Source: Gracilinanus agilis (taxonomy: Eukaryota). Taken from it: 63,874 bases of DNA. The stretch covers positions 289,125,886-289,189,759 of the forward strand of contig NC_058131.1 in NCBI RefSeq assembly GCF_016433145.1. The letters are read 5' to 3'. The position numbers and the translations under genes were made by a program. The notes beneath the pieces are model-generated. The model was given only the letters and a program-made list of their open reading frames with translations. It had not been told where the DNA came from and searched no databases. Below, piece after piece: positions 11,225 through 21,800 of this stretch (positions are counted from its first letter, which is position 1; each line of letters begins with the position of its first letter).

Positions 11225-14200
11225 GTAAGTGGGGCCTCCATATCCCCCAGCCTAAGATCTTCACCTTCCACCAGAAAGTCTGAGGGGAGAACTGAGCCTC
11301 ATCCTTCTTTCTCTCCCTGGACTTTGGGGAAAACATGTCTTCAAAAGAGGTCAGGAAGCCCAGGCAGCCACAGGCTACTGGTCCAGATGACAGGTCAGGC
11401 AGGGCAGATTTAGTACACTGAGAATCCCCTAGCCATCTTCCCAAACCCAAGTCACTTAAGTTCTTCTCAACTGTCAAGTGAGGAGACTGTTCTTCTAAGG
11501 CTCTTTCTAGCTCTAAGCCTCATGGATTGAGGAACATGTTAGGAACATGGCTATCTGGGGAGAAGGGGCAATTTCCCCAAAGTGTCCCCAATTCTCACCT
11601 GCCCTTCTCAACATAGAAGCAGTGTGCTGGAATTGGAGCTGAGGGACTTGGGTTCATCTTCCAGCTTTGGCATCTAAAATGCAAGTGACCATGATCACTT
11701 TTCACCTGTAAAACGGGGCACTGGAAAGTAGGACTCTCAGTTTCCTTCCCTTTCTAAGTCCATGATTCTCTTTCTGGGATTTTTCTTGGAATGAGAGATT
11801 AGAGTCATCTTGGTCTTCTTTTACCATGGAGGAGAGAGGCTCCTGGGGTTTTAGGACCTGGAGCATCTGCCCTCTTTTGCCTTTTGGGGGCACCAGGCGG
11901 CATGAGGTCTCAGCCCCAGTTTTCTACTTCTCTGGCTTTGACTGTTTTTGTTCAGGGATTCCAGAGATTTTGGATCTGGGTGGCAATGAGCCTGCCAAGG
12001 TGAGGATAGAAGGAGCCACAGCCAGAGGGGCAACCCTGGTCCTTGGGCAGGGGCTCTAGGATATGAAAGGGCAGAGCTTATGATAGAGGTGGAAGAACTT
12101 CAGATTTGGATGAAAGGACCTGGGATCAAATTTTTGCACAGCTTGTTTCTACTGGGACCCAGTTTCCTCCTAATCTATAATATGGGGGGCTAAGGTGTTG
12201 AACTCTGTTGGTCCTTAAGGTTTTATTTAGCCCCAAATTCTACAGGCCTTTAAAAGAGGACTCATTCTTTAGTGTATCATGCCTCCACCCCCACCCCTTC
12301 CCTCCTTGTCCTCCTCCCCCTTCTTTGAGGAGTAACTGGAGCCTGGGCCCAGCTGTTCTTACAGCCTTGGCCTAAGAATAGCCAAGTCCTCTGGCCTAGG
12401 GTAGGACGTGGTGGGGGGAGGGGAGTTGGGAAGGGTGGACGAAAGGGTCCTATGATTCCTCATGCTCTGGAGGGTGGAGATTCTGGGTATAGGACTAAGG
12501 TTAGACTTCTCAAATTCCTTTAACAGACAATAGCAATAAATGAATAAATTCCTGGAGCTAGAAAGGACTTTGGAGATCTAGTCCAATTCTTTCATTTTTA
12601 CAGATGAAAAAACTGAGGCCCCATATTAAGTCAATGTCAAAACTGGAACTCACACTCAAGTCTCTAGACTCCAATTCCAGGACTTTCCCCACTAAACTAA
12701 AATGCCTCTCGGAGCCTCACAAAAGCCCTGGCAGGAACATGGGATTATCCCCATTTGGCAGAGGTGTTAACTGGGATCCCTTGAGGTTAATTGAGGTTAA
12801 TCGTTTTAACTAATTAGACCCCATTAAGGCAGGATGGGATAGTGGATATGTACTGAAGTCAGAAGTCCCGGGTTCAAATGTCAGCTCTCCCACAATATTT
12901 CCTTATGATTTTGGGCAAATCACGTAATCTCTCAGTTTCCTCTTCTATAAAATAAGGGGGTTAGGATTCCATGATCATGAGGACCCTTTCAACTCTAATA
13001 TTGTCATGTTTTTTAATAGTCAGCAGCTGAGATCTCCCAGTTTTAATCTTTACTCCCTCAGCCTGCCTCAGCTTAATGGATGAGGAAGTGGTCGGGATGA
13101 GAACACCAGTTAGTTCTCTCTGTTCTGCTGTGTTAAAGAACAGGGCTAGGAGTATGGCTTGCCTGGGCCCCATGAGGAGAAGGCTGTATGTGCCCTTCTG
13201 AACAGACGAATCCTTTGGAGTCCTAGGATGGCATTAGTATTGGGTGGGGACAGAGTGGTGGTTGTGGTGAATTTTTATATAAATTCCTCACAACCGTGAA
13301 CTAAAGACATGGCAGGACAAAATGTCAGATGCTGCCAAGCTGGGGAAGACTTTGAGTATAGGCCCAGAGAGACAGTACATCTGTTGTCCAAGGACTGGTT
13401 GACCTACTAAGTAAGCAGAAATGTTATCATCAAAAGACTGGTCACCGGAAGGGGATTCTGGGGGCCACAGAAACTCATAGGGTCATAGAAAGGACCTTGG
13501 AGACCATTTCATCCAATACCCTCCTTTTACTGATAGGGAAATAGGGAGCCAGAAAAGTGAGCAAGCCCAAGTGAGCAGTAAAATAGGGACCTAGACCTGG
13601 GTTCAACAGTGGGATTAGCTCTTGGCTCTCCCCACCTTTTTTGGGAATCCCTGTTTCCCTTTCTTCTTCCCTTTCTCCTCCCCGAGCATTGGTACCTGAC
13701 TTCCTTTGCATCTTGCAGACGGACCAGCAGGCAGAAGCCCGGTCCTTCCTCAGCGAGGAAATGATTGCTGGTGAGTGTGTGTCCTGGCGGGTGGGCAGTG
13801 GAAGGGACTATTTTTGCCTGGGGAGTAAACTTAAGGCTGTGACAACCCTGAGGATGGCATATCCTCCTTGTTTATTACTCTGCTACTCCTCCCCTCAGAG
13901 TTCAAGGCTGCCTTCGACATGTTTGATGCTGATGGTGGTGGTGACATCAGCACCAAGGAACTGGGCACAGTAATGCGGATGTTGGGCCAGACACCCACCA
14001 AAGAGGAGTTGGATGCCATCATAGAAGAGGTGGATGAAGATGGTGAGCTGGGGCTCTCCTGTGAGTGAATTGTGAGCACTGGGTGACTGCATCTTTGCAG
14101 GGCTCTGATGCTCACTCTCCCCAATCTAGGCAGTGGCACCATCGACTTTGAGGAGTTCTTGGTCATGATGGTGCGCCAGATGAAAGAGGATGCGAAAGGG

Positions 14201-16100: not shown

Positions 16101-17012
16101 GAATCCAGCACTGTTCACAGCCCCTCCATCCTTCACTTCCAAGGGTTCAGCCAGAGATTCAACTGGCTCCTCTCTCCCTGAGACCATCCAGGGCTCCCCA
16201 AACTATTCCTCCTCATCTTCCACCCTCTGCTTCCCTGTCCCTCCCTCATGTGATGTTCCCCTTCCACTTCTCCCCTCCTGGTCTATTCCTGATGTGTAAA
16301 TGTCATTCACCAATAAAGGAAAAAGATTTCACTCAGAGTGGGGCTTGGGGCTCGGGGCTTCTTGATCATCTTCTAGACAGAGAGAACACTGGGTTTATCT
16401 AATGACTAAAGGGTTCTGCCCTTTGCTAGGTGTGTGACCCTGGGCGAGTCCCGATCTCTCTCTGCTTCAGTTTGCTCATTGGCAAGGTGAGATCAATAGC
16501 ACTCAGGGGGCCGTGGGGAGGATAACGCAAAGTCCTTTGCAAATCCTAAAGGCTTTCTTTATAATAGAAATGTTAGCTGTTGCAAGGAGAGCAAGTTGAG
16601 GTTTCATGCAAGGAAAACTCCTCCGGGTTGGCGCCATCCCCAAGCTCCGGCTCGGGCATCAGCAAGCCGAAGGGGGCCATCTCTGGAGTTCTCCGAGTCC
16701 TCTAGGGAATCACTGATCCCAGAGTTGTTGAAGGGTCTGGACTCCACAGCTAATGTCAGGAGGGTGGGGGCAGCAGGGAGGGGGAAGGGGAGGGAAGCAG
16801 GCGAGTCCGACCAGCGGGCGTAGAGGGAACTGGTGGGCCGGCGCTTTGCGGCTGTCCCCGCCTTCTACCCCTCCCCTCCCCCCTCCTCCACCCTCCTGGA
16901 TGGGTAGGGAAGGGGCTGGCCTCTGGCAAGGGCGGAGGCTGGAAGCGGGAGAGCCTGGGCTTTGCGACTCCTGGCTGAGGCCGAGGCCAAGATCGTCCAG
17001 AGTGTGGGAGGC

Positions 17013-18096
17013 ATGCGTGGCGGGGGGCCGGGGGAGAGGGCCCGGGAAGCCCGGGAGGCTGTGGCCGAGTGCAGGGCAGCGTACGAAGCGCTCAACAGGT
17101 TCACCGCGAGCTACAGGCAGTTGGTGCTGGGAGTGGGCAGCTCGGCGGACGGGAGGAGGCTGCGCCGGGCTCTGGAGGAGAGCGGTCGCAGGGGCTTCGA
17201 GCTGAGTCTAGGTGAGCGGACCGGGCGCGGGGGCTGATGGAAGGGGTAGGAGGGGGCGAGGCGCGGAGCGGGGAGAGGGTAGCGGGGCTTCTGAGCCTCC
17301 GAATGGGAACGGCGCGGCGTTTGGAACAGACACGGAGTTCGAATCCGGACTGCTGCCTGTTGCCCGGCTTCCCCTTCTGTAAAAGGAGAGTGGACCACAC
17401 GGCCTTCGTAGGATGCCTGGCCACACCTGCTGGTCCTTCTGGTCGTAGGACCCTAGCGGTTCTTACAGCCTAGGAAACCGAGGCCATTTGTTAAGTTCTC
17501 CCCGTGGCCACAGAACAACGCACCCCCCCCCCCCTGCCCTCCCCTTCCCTGACTGTTGCTGCCCCTGCTGTTTGCCTTCTCTCCCCCTCTCTCCCCGTCC
17601 CCAACCAGGCCTTCGGAACCAGCTTTTGGCCGAGCTCACAGAACCGGGAACTAGGCAGGAGGAAGAGGTGAAGATGGAGCTGGAGCGGATCTGGGTGCTA
17701 TGTCTGTCTGCCCTGGAGATTTTCCTGCAGGATCTGGGTCGGGCCCATGACCTCAGCCAGCTCTTCCCCATGCCATCTCCAGCCCCAGGGATCCAGTTGG
17801 TCAATACTGGGGTCACATCCTTTGGGCCTAAGGGATGGAGCCTGAGAAGGCCCAGTGGGAAGGCCTCTGAAAGAGCTGGGGAGCTGCCTGAGGAGCTGGC
17901 CCAGTGGGGGCAACGCCTGGAAGAGATGCTCTTGGAGATGGAGACCAAGGTCAACGTACCAGTGTGGAGTGTTGAGGCCACAGTGGGTGGTCCTGGAGCA
18001 GAAGAACCAAGCCCAGAGGGCTCAGCTGGGAGGAGTCCTCAGGGCTGCTGTGCCCAGGCTCCCCCTGGGCTGCAGTGGCATTGTGTAGTGGCATGA
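17013..18096 (+). CDS. RGS9-binding protein (R9AP/RGS9BP)-like paralogue, 228 aa, two exons (17013-17211, 17609-18096), C-terminal CaaX
   Basis: ATG at 17013 is the first in-frame ATG after an upstream TAG (16905). Donor cta g|GTGAGC and acceptor pyrimidine tract...ccaacCAG|gc are phase 1 and join the ORF with no stops (199+488 = 687 nt). Blocks match remembered R9AP: ECRAAYEALNRFTASYRQLVLGVGSSADGRRLR vs [40 protein letters not shown] vs EFERLWV; LFP...LVNTGV vs AFP...LVRTGV; METKVNVPVWSV vs MEMKVNVPRWTV. It sits in a CpG-rich segment. Confidence 0.9.
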
Positions 18097-18860
18097 AGGA
18101 GCCTGGCTCTAGAGAAGGGGCATCTCTCCCCTAACCTCCCAAGAGGTCAGTAGATGTCAATCTTCTATATCAGGGGAACCACTTTCAATTTTTGGCTAAT
18201 AAGTCACTTTCTTTTCCAGTTCAAATCCCATCCCCATCAGAATGTATGACTAGCAGGGAGGATTAGAAAAGATCTCTTAAGCCCAAGGGCAAGGGCTGAA
18301 GTGTAGCTACAAACTTAAAACAGCTGGGAGGCAGGACAATAGTGAGAGAGCATAAAAACCACTCTGTAAAAGACCAGGTTCTTGGTCCATTGATTTAACA
18401 ATGCTTGCTTTTCCCTTTCCCTTTCCCCATCAGCTGGTCCAGTTCCAGGATTCCTTCTAGTTCAAAACATTCCATGGCCTATGTTCTAATGTCCCATCTA
18501 GCTCTGACATTATGAATGTGTTTGCTCCAGTCCAGCCCAGACCCTTGGGAATTGTCTCCTCTAGGACTAGGTTCAATTTACAGCTCACCAATTTCCCATC
18601 CTGTCTCTGGAGAACCAAACAACACAAAAACGGCTTTTAAAAAACAAAACAAAATTTATTTATACATTAATGTTGAGGACTGGACTAGAGTTGAACAAAG
18701 AAAGAAAAGAAAAACATCAGAAGAAAAGGAAAACAGTCTGTGACAGAGAACTGGACAGAAGAGAGAAGATAGGTCTTCAGGAAGGAAAAGGCTACATACA
18801 CATAGATACATACATACACACACACACAAGATGAAGGCAAAGGAAGCTGGGCAGTCAGGG

Positions 18861-21800
18861 TCAGGGCTCTTGGCTGGTCACCTGCTTCATGTAGGTTTCC
18901 AGCAGGTACTTTTTAAAGGCTGGGGAGAGAAGAGGATGAGTAAGTAAGCAAACTGGCTTTGGTAGGTTCGAGAAACATGTAATCCAATAGTTTTAGAAAT
19001 GGAGTAATCTGGCTATGATCTTCTCCAGTTTCTTTCCTGATCCTAGACTGGTCCTTTTCCCTTTTGCCCATTTCTAAGGGAGCTGCCTACAGTAAAGGAG
19101 TCATGTCTGTATAGTCTACCTTTGCCCTATGAGCTAACCAGATTAAAGTCCAGGTGTACACACCAAACTCCCTCCCCTAAGGTTCTTCTATTCCATTTCC
19201 TTAAGAGGATACACATTTTTGTTAAAAGCTCTCCTTGGATTTTTGTGACAGCTATTCTTAAAATACCAGTGGTAAGCTTAATTATTTTATCTAAATTGCC
19301 CAAAGTTCTCAAGGAGAAAGAGTGAAATCTGTTTAGGGCAGGGTTTTTTCACTTTAAATCCTCTAGGGCCATGTTAGCAAAGACATGGCATTCATGCCCC
19401 GGCACGCCCGAGGGGGCTGCTGCATCCTGCCTCTACACCTGGGGACAATTTCCACATGCCCTGCCCCTTGTACAGAGGCCCAATGTGAGCTGTCCTCCCT
19501 CCACTTTCTGGGGTAATGGTGACGCCTCACAGGCATACTGAAGGTGCAGTCTGGGCAGGAGATCTTTTAAAAGGTTTGCCAACACTGCTGTAGGAGAAAG
19601 ATTGGGGTTCCTGTTTTAGCAGAGGACCTACCTGTAGGGTTTGTCCAAAGCTCAGCAGCATGTGTGTTCAATGGGCTATCAATATTGGGTTCTGTAGGTG
19701 GAGACAACATGTTAGGACAGAAGGACCTGAGAAAGAACTGTTAAGGAAATTGGAGATCTGTGGGAACCAGGTTCAGAAGTGTTAGTAATGGTTAGACTAA
19801 CTTAGCTTCTCACATTCTATGAGTCACAAGATGATAAAAGAAATTAGGTGGCTCAATAGATAGAGATCCCAGAGGTCCTGGGTTCAAATCTGGCCTCATA
19901 TACATCCTAGCTGCGTTAACCTGGGCAAGTCACTTAACCCCCATTACCTAACCCAAATCACTCTTCTGCTTTGAGACCAACATACAGTATTGATTTTAAG
20001 ATGGAAGGTAAAGATTTTGGGGGAAAAGATGGTAGAAGGAAATGATGGGAAGGGTAACCCTAAAACTTCAGAGGAAAGTCCAGGGTGGGGCAGTGGAACA
20101 TCCCCACAAGCTAGCAGGCATCACCTCCCAGCAGGCTCTGGATAGAGAGTAGGATGGTCCTGACATCATACAGAGCTGACCACTTGTCTTTGAGAATGTC
20201 CAAACAGATATTGCCTTGGGTGTCCACATTAGGATGGTAGCAGGGTGTGACAAATTTCACTGTGGGAGCATTATATGGATAGCCGCTGGGGAACTCCAGA
20301 GAAAGCTTGTACCTCAGATCTTCATATACCTGGATGAAGAAGCACCCAAGTAAATTAATGAGTGGACTGGAATGAGGGATATTTAAGCCACAGAAGATGT
20401 TCTGGTACAGTGGGAAGAACACTGTAAAAGTCCAAAGGCTTAGTTTTAGTTCCTGTTTTTTTCTGGTTCACGGAAAAATCTGAGCTTTAGTTCTTCATCT
20501 ATAAAATGGGGATAAACATAGCATAAACATAACTATCTGGTTCACAGAATTGAGGAGATGATCAATCAGTTGAGTTAAAGGATGTGAAAGTTTCTGAATT
20601 GCAAATTTTATTTTATTTTAATAAATATTTTCCCATGATTCATGTTATCTCCCTCCCCCCTCCCGGAGGGACAAGCAACTGAATTGCTGAATTGCACATT
20701 TTAAGAGATCATTCACTATTTTGGGTGGGGGTTTTCTCTATCTCCTCAAGGGGTTCCCCTCACTTAGCCCATCTGTTTATCGGTATATACAAGTCAAAGC
20801 AAACTCCATTGTGTCCAATTCATTTTCAATCCTTGATACTCACAGTCCCAGCAGCACCATGGATGGTCCCGACCCATTTGAAGAGATTGTCTGACTCTGG
20901 GAAGGCAGAAATTCCTTTATCTCCAGACATCTGCAGAGGAAGAATAATCAGGGTGGGGTTGCTGAACAAGTAGCCTTAGATGATCCCAAGGGTCCCTTCC
21001 AGAATCCTGTGCCTCTAAAGGGGAGGGAGAATAGTTGGGCGAAGAGGCAACAGTCCAAGATTTGCTTATAGCTGATCCCAATAAAATACAATCTGACTGA
21101 TTAGGGTGTTTTTTTGAAGAGTGGGGTGGGGTGGTATAAACAGGCGGAGCTGGGAGATCAGCAACCAGCCCTCCTGGGGAAGGCTACTGATTAAGAGTTG
21201 GTGTTATAAAATCCCACATTTTCTCCAGGTGCTCCCCTCTAAAAAATGGGAGTTAAATTCGAGGTCCCTTTTCAGCTGAGAATCTTTCCCTCTATGAGGG
21301 AGGAAGAGCTGTGGGTAGGTTTGGGTTGGAGCCAGGGAGATCCGAAGGGGCCTCCTGGCTGCTGGGCTGACCACGGGAGGCACTCACCATTAGGGTCATC
21401 AATTCCTGTTGTAATCTGCGGGAAATCCGCAAGGGAGAGGGTTCGGTTACTGAGCATTAAGACTAGAACAAACTTACCCCACTATCCTGCTCTCCCCGCA
21501 CCCAGTCTGACCTTTGGCTGATGGAGTATTCAACCCTCACCCTAACCTCCAGCTCCAGCCTGCCTTCCTCTTCCCCTCCCTCCATCGGCCTACCCGAGTC
21601 TGCCTCCCTCTCCTCTCCCCCCACCTCTCCAGCCTGTTCTCCAATCTGACTCCCCAATCTGCCCTCCCTGCTTCCCCCCCACCCCCCCCACTCTCCAGTA
21701 TTCTCTCCTCCCTCCCCTACTCCTCATCCTGCCCTCTCTGCCACTCGCTCTTCGCCTTCCAGGCTGAAGGAATTCTCACCTCTTGCCCACGGACCCTCGG

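What the first reader, a model, noticed from the sequence alone, without database searches (positions are those of the whole stretch)
18043..18096. Transmembrane anchor replaced by a Ras-like dual lipidation signal: GCC...CVVA-stop
Seen: the protein ends SPQGCCAQAPPGLQWHCVVA* with no hydrophobic transmembrane helix. CVVA is a canonical CaaX box (18082-18093), and a di-cysteine (18046-18051) lies 11-12 residues upstream of the CaaX Cys. Established: CaaX with X = A is a farnesyltransferase substrate, and H/N-Ras add palmitate on nearby upstream Cys. R7BP uses a palmitoylated CC without prenylation; R9AP uses a transmembrane helix. Inference: a third anchoring chemistry (farnesyl plus reversible palmitoyl) in this family, which would allow membrane cycling of RGS complexes.
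Basis: partly seen in the sequence, partly recalled or inferred. Interest (0 to 1): 0.8.

Follow-up and report, generated by a model that had tools for sequence, protein, structure and literature searches.

The report
Lipid-anchored R9AP-like RGS anchor gene
This marsupial gene is the little-studied third relative of the RGS9 and RGS7 membrane anchors, and its whole vertebrate clade has no membrane-spanning helix but ends in a conserved cysteine-rich prenylation-type signal, which is predicted from sequence and not yet shown at the bench.

Summary
A two-exon gene on the + strand (17013-17211 and 17609-18096) encodes a 228-aa protein ending ...GCCAQAPPGLQWHCVVA-stop, with no hydrophobic helix. 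It is the marsupial orthologue of the already catalogued "R9AP-like / RGS9BP3" paralogue (Lamb 2018). It lies between TNNC2 and UBE2C, as it does in opossum, koala, bilby, degu and a parrot.

The Cys at -4 is not a marsupial quirk. On a tree built from core columns only, the R9AP-like clade (support 100/100) holds 26 rows with Cys at -4, two with neither signal and none with a TM helix. It nests among TM-anchored R9AP, R9AP-B and invertebrate homologues. Of 49 distinct R9AP-like tails, 35 have Cys at -4, and each of those has at least one more Cys within 20 residues upstream. The di-Cys aligns with the juxtamembrane Cys of the TM paralogues, so the tail looks like a shortened tail anchor.

dN/dS against koala is 0.13. 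CVVA and CIVA are in a published yeast farnesyltransferase-positive set. An engineered R9AP with CCIIL in place of its TM helix is reported to work.

Lipidation, RGS binding and expression remain untested. I found no paper describing this anchor. The scan had already noted the gene itself on this same window (s1-173134). Verdict: a real feature and a new variant of a known kind.

The parts
17013..17211 (+). Coding exon 1 of the R9AP-like gene (aa 1-66 plus the first base of codon 67). ATG at 17013, donor GT at 17212. It lies in a CpG-rich stretch (CpG o/e 0.82 at 17001-17500).
   Evidence: The same 199-nt exon is present in koala.
17212..17608 (+). The single coding intron (397 nt, GT...AG, phase 1), with a long C/T-rich tract before the acceptor.
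   Evidence: The koala intron is 373 nt at the same position. One coding intron is the stated hallmark of R9AP-like genes (PMC5795056).
17609..18096 (+). Coding exon 2 (aa 67-228 plus the stop).
   Evidence: (97% identical to the Monodelphis RGS9BP-like protein).
17028..17763 (+). Syntaxin-like three-helix bundle (aa 6-118; the range spans the intron).
   Evidence: AlphaFold model of the 97%-identical opossum protein: helices 6-39, 48-77 and 84-117, pLDDT mostly above 90. Foldseek hits to R9AP, R7BP and syntaxins.
17872..17949 (+). Fourth helix (aa 155-180), the SNARE-homology-like heptad helix.
17950..17967 (+). VNVPVW motif (aa 181-186), the family-wide landmark before the tail. The Trp is invariant.
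17968..18093 (+). Predicted disordered C-terminal tail (aa 187-228). No hydrophobic helix; less constrained than the core (omega 0.33 for aa 191-228).
18046..18051 (+). Di-cysteine C213-C214, a candidate palmitoylation site. It aligns with the juxtamembrane Cys/CC of TM-type R9AP-B and lamprey R9AP.
18082..18093 (+). CaaX box C225-V-V-A, a predicted farnesylation site.
   Evidence: CVVA and CIVA are in the prenylation-positive set of PMC9231725, S1 File.
18094..18096 (+). TGA stop codon.
   Evidence: The stop is at the same place in koala.
18861..18992 (-). Last coding exon of the convergent neighbour UBE2C (...[19 protein letters not shown]-stop). It limits the room for any further R9AP-like exon.
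18655..18660 (-). AATAAA on the - strand, probably the UBE2C poly(A) signal. It is conserved in koala.
13955..13978 (+). EF-hand exon of the upstream neighbour TNNC2 (KELGTVMR).
   Evidence: Same synteny.

Best explanation
The stretch is the 3' end of an intact, selectively constrained marsupial orthologue of the vertebrate 'R9AP-like' (RGS9BP-like / RGS9BP3) gene. This gene is the third member of the R9AP group, besides R9AP and R9AP-B, and a more distant relative of R7BP. The protein keeps the syntaxin-like three-helix bundle and the SNARE-like helix of R9AP. It lacks the C-terminal tail-anchor helix and instead ends in a disordered tail with a di-Cys and a CaaX box.

Proposed mechanism (inferred): cytosolic farnesyltransferase farnesylates Cys225 of CVVA. 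The -VVA tripeptide is then clipped and the new C-terminus is methylated at the ER, which is the usual CaaX pathway. One or both of C213/C214 are S-palmitoylated, giving stable but reversible membrane attachment. The lipid-anchored protein then recruits an R7-family RGS-Gbeta5 complex to membranes, as R9AP and R7BP do.

Evolution (shown by tree and alignment; the direction is inferred from the invertebrate root): the TM helix was lost once, on the stem of the R9AP-like clade before jawed vertebrates diverged. The tail downstream of the ancestral juxtamembrane CC became about 18 residues shorter. The signal has been kept since. X is Ala, Ser or similar in mammals, turtles, crocodilians, frogs, fishes and rays, and Leu in birds.
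For: Identity of the gene:
- Hits to RGS9BP-like proteins of opossum (97%), koala, bilby and degu.
- A profile search recovers TM-type R9AP at E 1e-20 to 1e-27 (names).
- AF2 gives a three-helix bundle, a fourth helix and a disordered tail. Foldseek top hits are R9BP and R7BP, then syntaxins.
- One coding intron, as Lamb 2018 states for R9AP-like.
- TNNC2 > gene < UBE2C synteny in five species.

The gene is functional: dN/dS against koala is 0.129 at dS 0.30, with identical exon lengths.

The anchor:
- No TM helix.
- The R9AP-like clade (100/100 support, core columns only, rooted on invertebrates) has 26 rows with Cys at -4, 2 with neither and 0 with TM. Its sister groups are all TM.
- 35 of 49 distinct tails have Cys at -4, and each of those has at least one extra Cys within 20 aa. 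69 of 84 sauropsid and amphibian models have Cys at -4.
- The CC column aligns with the juxtamembrane Cys of the TM paralogues.
- CVVA and CIVA are in the experimentally derived prenylation-positive set for yeast FTase.
- X = Ser or Ala signals farnesyl and X = Leu signals geranylgeranyl (PMC5795056).
- Proof of principle: R9AP with its TM replaced by CCIIL keeps its localisation and RGS9-Gbeta5 binding (Gospe 2011, as cited in PMC4148253).
Against: - No lipidation, expression or RGS-binding data exist for this protein in any species that I could find.
- The CC is 11-12 residues from the CaaX Cys, further than the 2-5 residues in H-Ras. This spacing comes from my own knowledge of H-Ras.
- The tail evolves faster than the core (omega 0.33).
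- 14 of 49 tails lack Cys at -4. Most are fragments, placental relics or alternative models, but pipefish and clingfish models appear to have truly lost it while keeping the CC.
- CGVL of passerines is in the FTase-negative set.
- No canonical AATAAA follows the stop on the + strand before 20620, so the 3' end of the mRNA is undefined.
- R7BP itself was not retrieved by the sequence profile; it was found only by fold.
Confidence: 0.7

Rival explanations
1. The protein is prenylated only. The CaaX Cys is prenylated, but the upstream CC is not palmitoylated. The CC is then a leftover of the ancestral juxtamembrane motif or has another role, and the protein would sit on endomembranes or bind membranes weakly.
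For: In marsupials the CC is 11-12 residues from the CaaX Cys. Sturgeon keeps only one upstream Cys (GCF...CLMP). The CC is also present in TM-type R9AP-B and lamprey R9AP, so it predates the lipid anchor.
Against: Every one of the 35 tails with Cys at -4 keeps at least one extra Cys within 20 residues, and many have 3-4. Birds, crocodilians, turtles and rays place a Cys directly next to the CaaX Cys (CCaaX), the arrangement used for double lipidation in the engineered CCIIL construct.
Confidence: 0.17
2. The protein is not lipidated. The terminal Cys cluster is conserved for another reason, such as metal binding, a disulfide or partner binding, and the protein is soluble or is recruited only through partners.
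For: No direct data on lipidation exist. The tail is less constrained than the core. Some fishes lack the Cys at -4.
Against: What is conserved is the position of the Cys exactly four residues from the end, across more than 400 My, while the surrounding tail sequence drifts. That pattern is the signature of a CaaX signal rather than of a folded Cys motif. The tail is predicted to be disordered. CVVA and CIVA are known FTase-reactive motifs.
Confidence: 0.08
3. The real transcripts splice past the stop to another exon, possibly a hydrophobic one, so CVVA is not the true C-terminus.
For: The degu RefSeq model splices out of exon 2 to a third exon. Some Ensembl-derived bird models end in a hydrophobic peptide. 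No canonical poly(A) signal lies close to the stop in the window.
Against: The bird hydrophobic 'exon' is the antisense strand of the last UBE2C coding exon (L003 6216-6275). Its conservation is therefore explained by UBE2C, and the models are probably artefacts. In the window, no hydrophobic ORF lies between the stop and the UBE2C 3' end. The only candidate (19230) sits inside UBE2C and contains Lys and Pro. All three marsupial RefSeq models, and nearly all RefSeq models of other classes, end at the CaaX. Even the unspliced degu exon ends in CCRET, with Cys at -4.
Confidence: 0.04
4. The gene is a decaying relic in marsupials, as it is in placentals.
For: Almost all placentals have lost it (PMC5795056). 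Placental-looking fragments, and an elephant TNNC2 model that carries exon-1-like sequence, look like remnants.
Against: The ORF is intact, the exon structure is identical to koala, omega is 0.13, and a CpG-rich 5' end is present.
Confidence: 0.02

Closest known systems
R9AP (RGS9BP), the tail-anchored membrane anchor of RGS9-1/Gbeta5L in photoreceptors
   Same: Homologous by sequence (profile E 1e-20 to 1e-27). Same predicted fold: three-helix bundle plus a SNARE-like helix. Same VNVPxW motif before the tail.
   Different: R9AP has a C-terminal TM helix and no coding intron (PMC5795056). This protein has no TM helix, has one coding intron, and ends in CC...CaaX. About 30% identity.
R9AP-B (RGS9BP B / RGS9BP2) of amphibians and fishes
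   Same: Sister clade on the tree (89/91). Shares the di-Cys before the anchor (newt ...RCCRGGQYILSLILCGAAL...).
   Different: R9AP-B keeps the TM helix. The tail after the CC is 32-33 residues long, against 14-17 here.
R7BP (RGS7BP)
   Same: Same fold family (Foldseek E about 5e-6). A lipid anchor rather than a TM anchor. A C-terminal di-Cys that is palmitoylated (PMC2171691).
   Different: R7BP ends in CCLVSS, with four residues after the last Cys. It is not prenylated, since FTI and GGTI have no effect, and it has a polybasic/NLS stretch that drives nuclear shuttling. This protein has a true Cys at -4 and no polybasic stretch. Identity is only 16-18%, and R7BP was not found by the sequence profile.
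Engineered R9AP-CCIIL (Gospe et al. 2011, as cited by Pearring et al. 2014)
   Same: An R9AP body carrying a CCaaX double-lipidation signal in place of the TM helix. It is reported to keep normal localisation and RGS9-Gbeta5 binding. Bird R9AP-like proteins (HCCRVL, HCCVVL) are natural look-alikes.
   Different: It is a laboratory construct on the R9AP backbone. The marsupial tail has a single Cys at the CaaX and its CC lies 11-12 residues upstream.
H-Ras/N-Ras-type dual lipidation, and the prenylated phototransduction proteins (GRK1 farnesyl versus GRK7 geranylgeranyl)
   Same: A C-terminal CaaX with extra upstream Cys. The X residue switches between farnesyl-type and geranylgeranyl-type among lineages, as described for the GRKs (PMC5795056).
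   Different: There is no homology; the resemblance is in the signal only. The Cys spacing is larger than in Ras.

Membership tests
RGS7BP/RGS9BP (R9AP) family | Significant sequence similarity to R9AP | tested here: met
   An hmmsearch profile of the marsupial and degu proteins finds caecilian, desman, hagfish and lamprey R9AP at E 1e-20 to 1e-27. There is no Pfam model for the family.
RGS7BP/RGS9BP (R9AP) family | N-terminal three-helix (Habc-like) bundle plus a heptad/SNARE-homology helix | tested here: met
   AF2 gives helices 6-39, 48-77, 84-117 and 154-179. The Foldseek Swiss-Prot top 16 hits are all R9BP or R7BP, followed by syntaxins.
RGS7BP/RGS9BP (R9AP) family | Binds the DEP domain of R7 RGS proteins and anchors RGS-Gbeta5 to membranes | not testable with these tools
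   No binding data exist, and the interface residues are not defined well enough to score.
R9AP proper (tail-anchored) | C-terminal transmembrane helix | tested here: not met
   Maximum hydropathy over 19 residues is 0.51 for windows starting in the last 58 residues and 1.26 overall. The TM-type relatives score 2.1-3.2.
R9AP-like / RGS9BP3 clade | Falls inside the clade on a tree that excludes the anchor columns | tested here: met
   Clade support is 100/100 with invertebrates as outgroup, and 99 SH-aLRT on the larger quick tree.
R9AP-like / RGS9BP3 clade | One intron within the coding region (Lamb 2018) | tested here: met
R9AP-like / RGS9BP3 clade | Conserved position between TNNC2 and UBE2C | tested here: met
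   Window, opossum, koala, bilby, degu and parrot.
CaaX prenylation substrates | Cys exactly four residues from the C-terminus, aliphatic a2, and an X accepted by FTase | tested here: met
   The tail ends C-V-V-A-stop. CVVA and CIVA are listed as prenylation-positive for yeast FTase.
CaaX prenylation substrates | Accessible, unstructured C-terminus | tested here: met
   pLDDT is below 50 over residues 203-227 of the model.
CaaX prenylation substrates | Covalent isoprenoid on the Cys | not testable with these tools
   This needs metabolic labelling, mass spectrometry or inhibitor assays.
Ras-like dual lipidation (prenyl plus palmitoyl) | Additional Cys close to the prenylated Cys | tested here: inconclusive
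   The CC is present and conserved but lies 11-12 residues upstream in marsupials. It is adjacent (CCaaX) in birds, crocodilians, turtles and rays.
R7BP-type anchor (polybasic plus palmitoyl, nuclear shuttling) | Polybasic/NLS stretch before the di-Cys, and the last Cys not at -4 | tested here: not met
   The 20 residues before the CC (GGPGAEEPSPEGSAGRSPQG) hold one Arg and three Glu. The Cys is at -4. R7BP ends in CCLVSS.

The most novel reading that the evidence does not exclude
R9AP-like is a naturally prenylated and palmitoylated anchor for R7-RGS/Gbeta5 complexes that lacks a transmembrane helix. It arose once, before jawed vertebrates diverged, by shortening the tail anchor of an R9AP-B-like ancestor to the ancestral juxtamembrane CC plus a Cys near the start of the former helix. 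It then switched from farnesyl-type to geranylgeranyl-type signals in birds, and was lost in almost all placentals. Because lipid anchors can be extracted by prenyl-binding chaperones and by depalmitoylation, it would give non-placental vertebrates a movable GTPase-accelerating complex that humans and mice lack.
Probability: 0.45. Interest if true: 0.65.

Novelty: new variant of a known kind. Interest (0 to 1): 0.55.

Why it matters
R9AP and R7BP set where and how fast R7-family RGS proteins switch off G proteins in photoreceptors and neurons. The field treats them as the only two anchors because human and mouse have only these two. Most other vertebrates carry a third, R9AP-like, whose function is stated to be unknown (frog preprint).

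If its membrane attachment is a conserved CaaX-plus-Cys lipid signal rather than a helix, that gives an immediate and cheap experimental handle: Cys-to-Ser mutants, FTase/GGTase inhibitors and acyl-exchange assays. It also predicts different trafficking, including dependence on prenyl chaperones and reversibility. It would be a natural counterpart of the engineered R9AP-CCIIL construct, and a clean example of a tail-anchored protein converted to a lipid-anchored one. Zebrafish (Q504F3, ending CLLS), Xenopus and probably chicken make it testable in standard models.

Tried and rejected
- Pfam scans of both exon products gave no family.
- PDB sequence searches of both pieces found nothing meaningful. 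Foldseek against the PDB gave only weak syntaxin/Sso and STAT coiled-coil matches.
Names were then obtained by cluster look-ups and by a turtle query.
- DNA for the opossum and bilby loci could not be fetched because the files were too large, so dN/dS rests on koala alone.
- The Owenia (annelid) homologue ending in CTIL could not be checked at the DNA level. It may be a truncated model, because its last residues resemble the start of the TM segment of its relatives. I do not count it as an independent CaaX origin.
- A hydrophobic + strand ORF at 19230 was considered as a hidden TM exon and rejected. It lies inside UBE2C and contains Lys and Pro.
- Bird models with a hydrophobic end were traced to the antisense strand of UBE2C and rejected.
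- The supplements of the full 8000-motif FTase screen (PMC10320760), as held here, did not contain the motifs. The training-set table of PMC9231725 did.
- A literature search for CVVA or CIVA with farnesyl gave nothing useful.
- No prenylation or palmitoylation predictor is available among the tools.
Full report
**What is in the sequence**

The window is mammalian-type DNA with no N runs. At 18043-18096 the + strand reads GGC TGC TGT ... CAT TGT GTA GTG GCA TGA, that is G-C-C ... The ORF is the second of two coding exons:
- Exon 1 runs 17013-17211 (ATG at 17013, donor GT at 17212).
- Exon 2 runs 17609-18096 (acceptor AG at 17607-17608, after a long pyrimidine tract).
- The split codon G|GC encodes Gly.

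The spliced CDS is 687 nt and encodes 228 aa. Exon 1 sits in a CpG-rich patch (o/e 0.82). The highest 19-residue Kyte-Doolittle mean is 1.26 over the whole protein, on an amphipathic helix, and 0.51 for windows starting in the last 58 residues. The TM-anchored relatives score 2.1-3.2. There is therefore no TM helix.

**What gene it is**

Exon 2 is 97% identical to 'regulator of G-protein signaling 9-binding protein-like' of Monodelphis domestica and about 90% identical to the koala and bilby proteins. The only placental hit is the degu. The window therefore comes from a marsupial, probably a didelphid other than M. domestica.

Lamb et al. 2018 (PMC5795056) already describe three 'R9AP' genes in vertebrates: R9AP, R9AP-B and R9AP-like, with zero, two and one coding introns. 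They note that almost all placentals keep only R9AP and that the degu is the exception. A 2025 frog preprint calls the third gene RGS9BP3 and says its function is unknown.

The gene lies between TNNC2 (+ strand) and UBE2C (- strand, convergent). The same order holds in opossum, koala, bilby, degu and a parrot.

**Family membership**

Pfam has no model for the family, and the PDB holds no relative detectable by sequence. A profile of the four mammalian proteins, searched against 1.8 billion representatives, found 122 proteins. Among them are TM-type R9AP of caecilian, desman, hagfish and lamprey, and R9AP-B of newt and knifefish, at E 1e-20 to 1e-27 (names).

An AlphaFold model of the opossum protein (mean pLDDT 78) has three long helices (6-39, 48-77, 84-117), a fourth helix (154-179) and a disordered tail. 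Foldseek against Swiss-Prot returns only R9BP and R7BP entries in the top 16, then syntaxins.

dN/dS between the window and koala is 0.129 (dS 0.30): 0.082 for residues 1-190 and 0.33 for the tail. Exon lengths are identical in the two species. The gene is intact and under purifying selection.

**Is the CaaX conserved?**

Yes, and far beyond marsupials. Endings found in R9AP-like proteins:

| Lineage | C-terminal ending |
|---|---|
| Opossum, koala, bilby | CIVA |
| Turtles | CCTAS, CCTLS, CCILS |
| Crocodilians | CCTVS, CCTIS |
| Birds | CCRVL, CCGVL, CCVVL |
| Frogs | CMVS |
| Coelacanth | CVIS |
| Sturgeon, paddlefish | CLMP, CLMS, CLTS |
| Arowana | CMLH |
| Zebrafish (Swiss-Prot Q504F3) | CLLS |
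| Rays, sawfish | CCTIA, CCIIS, CCTIV |

I assigned clades by BLAST with the last 45 residues removed. Of 49 distinct R9AP-like tails, 35 have Cys at -4, none has a TM helix and 14 have neither. All 35 have at least one further Cys within 20 residues upstream. A separate search gave 69 of 84 sauropsid and amphibian models with Cys at -4.

The exceptions fall into four groups:
- fragments;
- short placental-looking relics;
- UniRef/Ensembl alternative models;
- a few fishes (two pipefishes and a clingfish) that keep the CC but not the Cys at -4.

The degu RefSeq model splices to a third exon and ends in CRSKG. Read straight on, its exon 2 ends ...VCCRET-stop, again with Cys at -4.

**Phylogeny**

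Trees were built only from the core columns (window residues 19-190), so the anchor cannot drive the topology.
- A quick tree of 78 rows that had either a TM helix or a Cys at -4 puts all 38 vertebrate rows of the CaaX type in one clade (SH-aLRT 99). Rows with neither signal, and fragments, were left out of that tree.
- A careful tree of 53 rows included the degu and clingfish 'neither' rows and was rooted on 17 invertebrate homologues. It gives the R9AP-like clade 100/100 support: 26 rows with Cys at -4, 2 with neither, 0 with TM.
- In that tree the clade is sister to TM-type R9AP-B (89/91), inside a vertebrate group whose other members (R9AP of jawed and jawless vertebrates) are all TM. 16 of the 17 invertebrate rows are TM.

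Branching inside the clade follows the species tree. The simplest reading is a single loss of the helix on the R9AP-like stem, followed by vertical inheritance.

**How the tail may have arisen**

The tails align at the VNVPxW motif and at a Cys/CC column. Three tails for comparison:
- Lamprey R9AP: ...AMLTEEGARGDP-CC-YPGRRLVAAF-C-GGALLLALVLAAAVVIFS
- Coelacanth R9AP-like: ...DVLTMDESTNRH-CC-YRGCWLI-C-VIS-stop
- This window: ...GRSPQG-CC-AQAPPGLQWH-C-VVA-stop

Ten residues separate the CC from the next Cys in lamprey R9AP, frog, turtle and marsupial R9AP-like. After the CC, the TM types have 32-33 residues and the R9AP-like tails have 14-17. The lipid-type tail thus looks like a tail anchor shortened by about 18 residues, with the juxtamembrane CC retained. 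I cannot distinguish truncation at a Cys near the start of the helix from an internal deletion. This part is inference.

**Would CVVA be prenylated?**

The rule that X = Ser or Ala directs farnesylation and X = Leu directs geranylgeranylation is restated in Lamb 2018 for the GRKs. In the training sets of Berger et al. 2022 (PMC9231725, S1 File), CVVA and CIVA are both in the 'Prenylation (positive)' column for yeast FTase. So are CVVL, CTIA, CTIT, CTIV, CTLS, CTVS, CTVL, CMVS, CLLS, CLMS, CGLL and CGLH, all of which occur in this clade. CGVL of passerines is in the negative column for FTase.

Drenan et al. 2005 showed that R7BP (CCLVSS) resembles CCAAX but has one residue too many. It is palmitoylated but not prenylated, and it has a polybasic signal. 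The present tail has a true Cys at -4 and no polybasic stretch. Pearring et al. 2014 report (citing Gospe 2011) that R9AP with its TM replaced by CCIIL keeps normal localisation and RGS9-Gbeta5 binding. A lipid anchor is therefore functionally sufficient on this scaffold.

**Could the stop be bypassed?**

The UBE2C last coding exon lies at 18992-18861 on the - strand. Its probable poly(A) signal is at 18660-18655, which leaves about 540 bp after the stop. No hydrophobic ORF lies in that stretch. The only hydrophobic + strand ORF (19230) is inside UBE2C and contains Lys and Pro.

Three bird models that end in a conserved hydrophobic peptide map to the antisense strand of the UBE2C last coding exon in the parrot locus (L003 6216-6275). 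Their 'conservation' is borrowed from UBE2C, and they are probably artefacts.

The 3' end of the marsupial mRNA remains undefined. No AATAAA occurs on the + strand before 20620; only variants are present, at 18198, 18351 and 19142. The interval between the two coding regions is 85% identical to koala, which suggests overlapping 3' UTRs.

**Verdict**

The interpretation passes the sequence-level tests that could be run here. It concerns a whole, already named paralogue rather than this genome alone, and the biochemistry is still prediction. I found no paper in the searchable library that describes the anchor of R9AP-like. Lamb 2018 discusses CaaX only for the GRKs. I rate it a new variant of a known kind, of moderate interest.

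Noticed in passing
L002:11165-11650 and L002:11930-12019 (degu): The degu RefSeq model of R9AP-like splices out of exon 2 to a third exon ending in CRSKG. The unspliced exon 2 continues ...SPEGSDRGGIFSGCLPTFWVCCRET-stop, which keeps a CC and a Cys at -4. The intron of this locus holds a 5.8-kb assembly gap.
   Followed up: partly
P0056 (elephant 'troponin C, skeletal muscle', 234 aa), residues 162-233: An elephant TNNC2 gene model carries, at its C-terminus, sequence homologous to R9AP-like exon 1. This is probably a remnant of the lost gene at the syntenic spot. Several short placental-looking fragments (P0052, P0054, P0059, P0063, P0076, P0106, P0124) look like similar relics.
   Followed up: partly
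L003:6216-6275 (parrot); proteins P0027, P0213, P0218: Ensembl/UniRef bird models of R9AP-like end in a conserved hydrophobic peptide (..LALGLL.VCLPHVLLVG). It is the antisense translation of the last UBE2C coding exon and probably comes from read-through or antisense transcripts of the convergent gene pair.
   Followed up: yes
window 18097-18700: The 540-600 bp between the stop codons of R9AP-like and UBE2C are 85% identical between this genome and koala, more than expected from dS = 0.30. This suggests conserved, possibly overlapping 3' UTRs of the convergent genes. No canonical + strand AATAAA follows the R9AP-like stop until 20620.
   Followed up: partly
P0053 (Owenia fusiformis, annelid): One invertebrate homologue ends in CTIL with no TM helix, while 16 other invertebrate rows have a TM helix. 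Its last residues (..ARSRLCTIL) resemble the start of the TM segment of its relatives (..RRRKCVCLV..), so the model may be truncated. The DNA could not be fetched.
   Followed up: partly
P0024, P0036 (pipefishes), P0045 (clingfish): Some teleost R9AP-like models keep the CC but lack a Cys at -4 (..CCWPACSRLKRASSN, ..SSCCCIRASK). This may be a secondary shift to a palmitoyl-only anchor like that of R7BP, or it may be a model error.
   Followed up: no
(hit list): Bird R9AP-like tails all end in X = Leu (CCRVL, CCGVL, CCVVL), while crocodilians and turtles end in Ser. This implies a farnesyl-to-geranylgeranyl-type switch on the bird stem. No squamate or monotreme orthologue appeared among the hits.
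   Followed up: partly
window 17521-17608: A run of C (17521-17535) and a roughly 90-nt C/T-rich tract precede the exon 2 acceptor. This is ordinary for an acceptor but unusually long.
   Followed up: no
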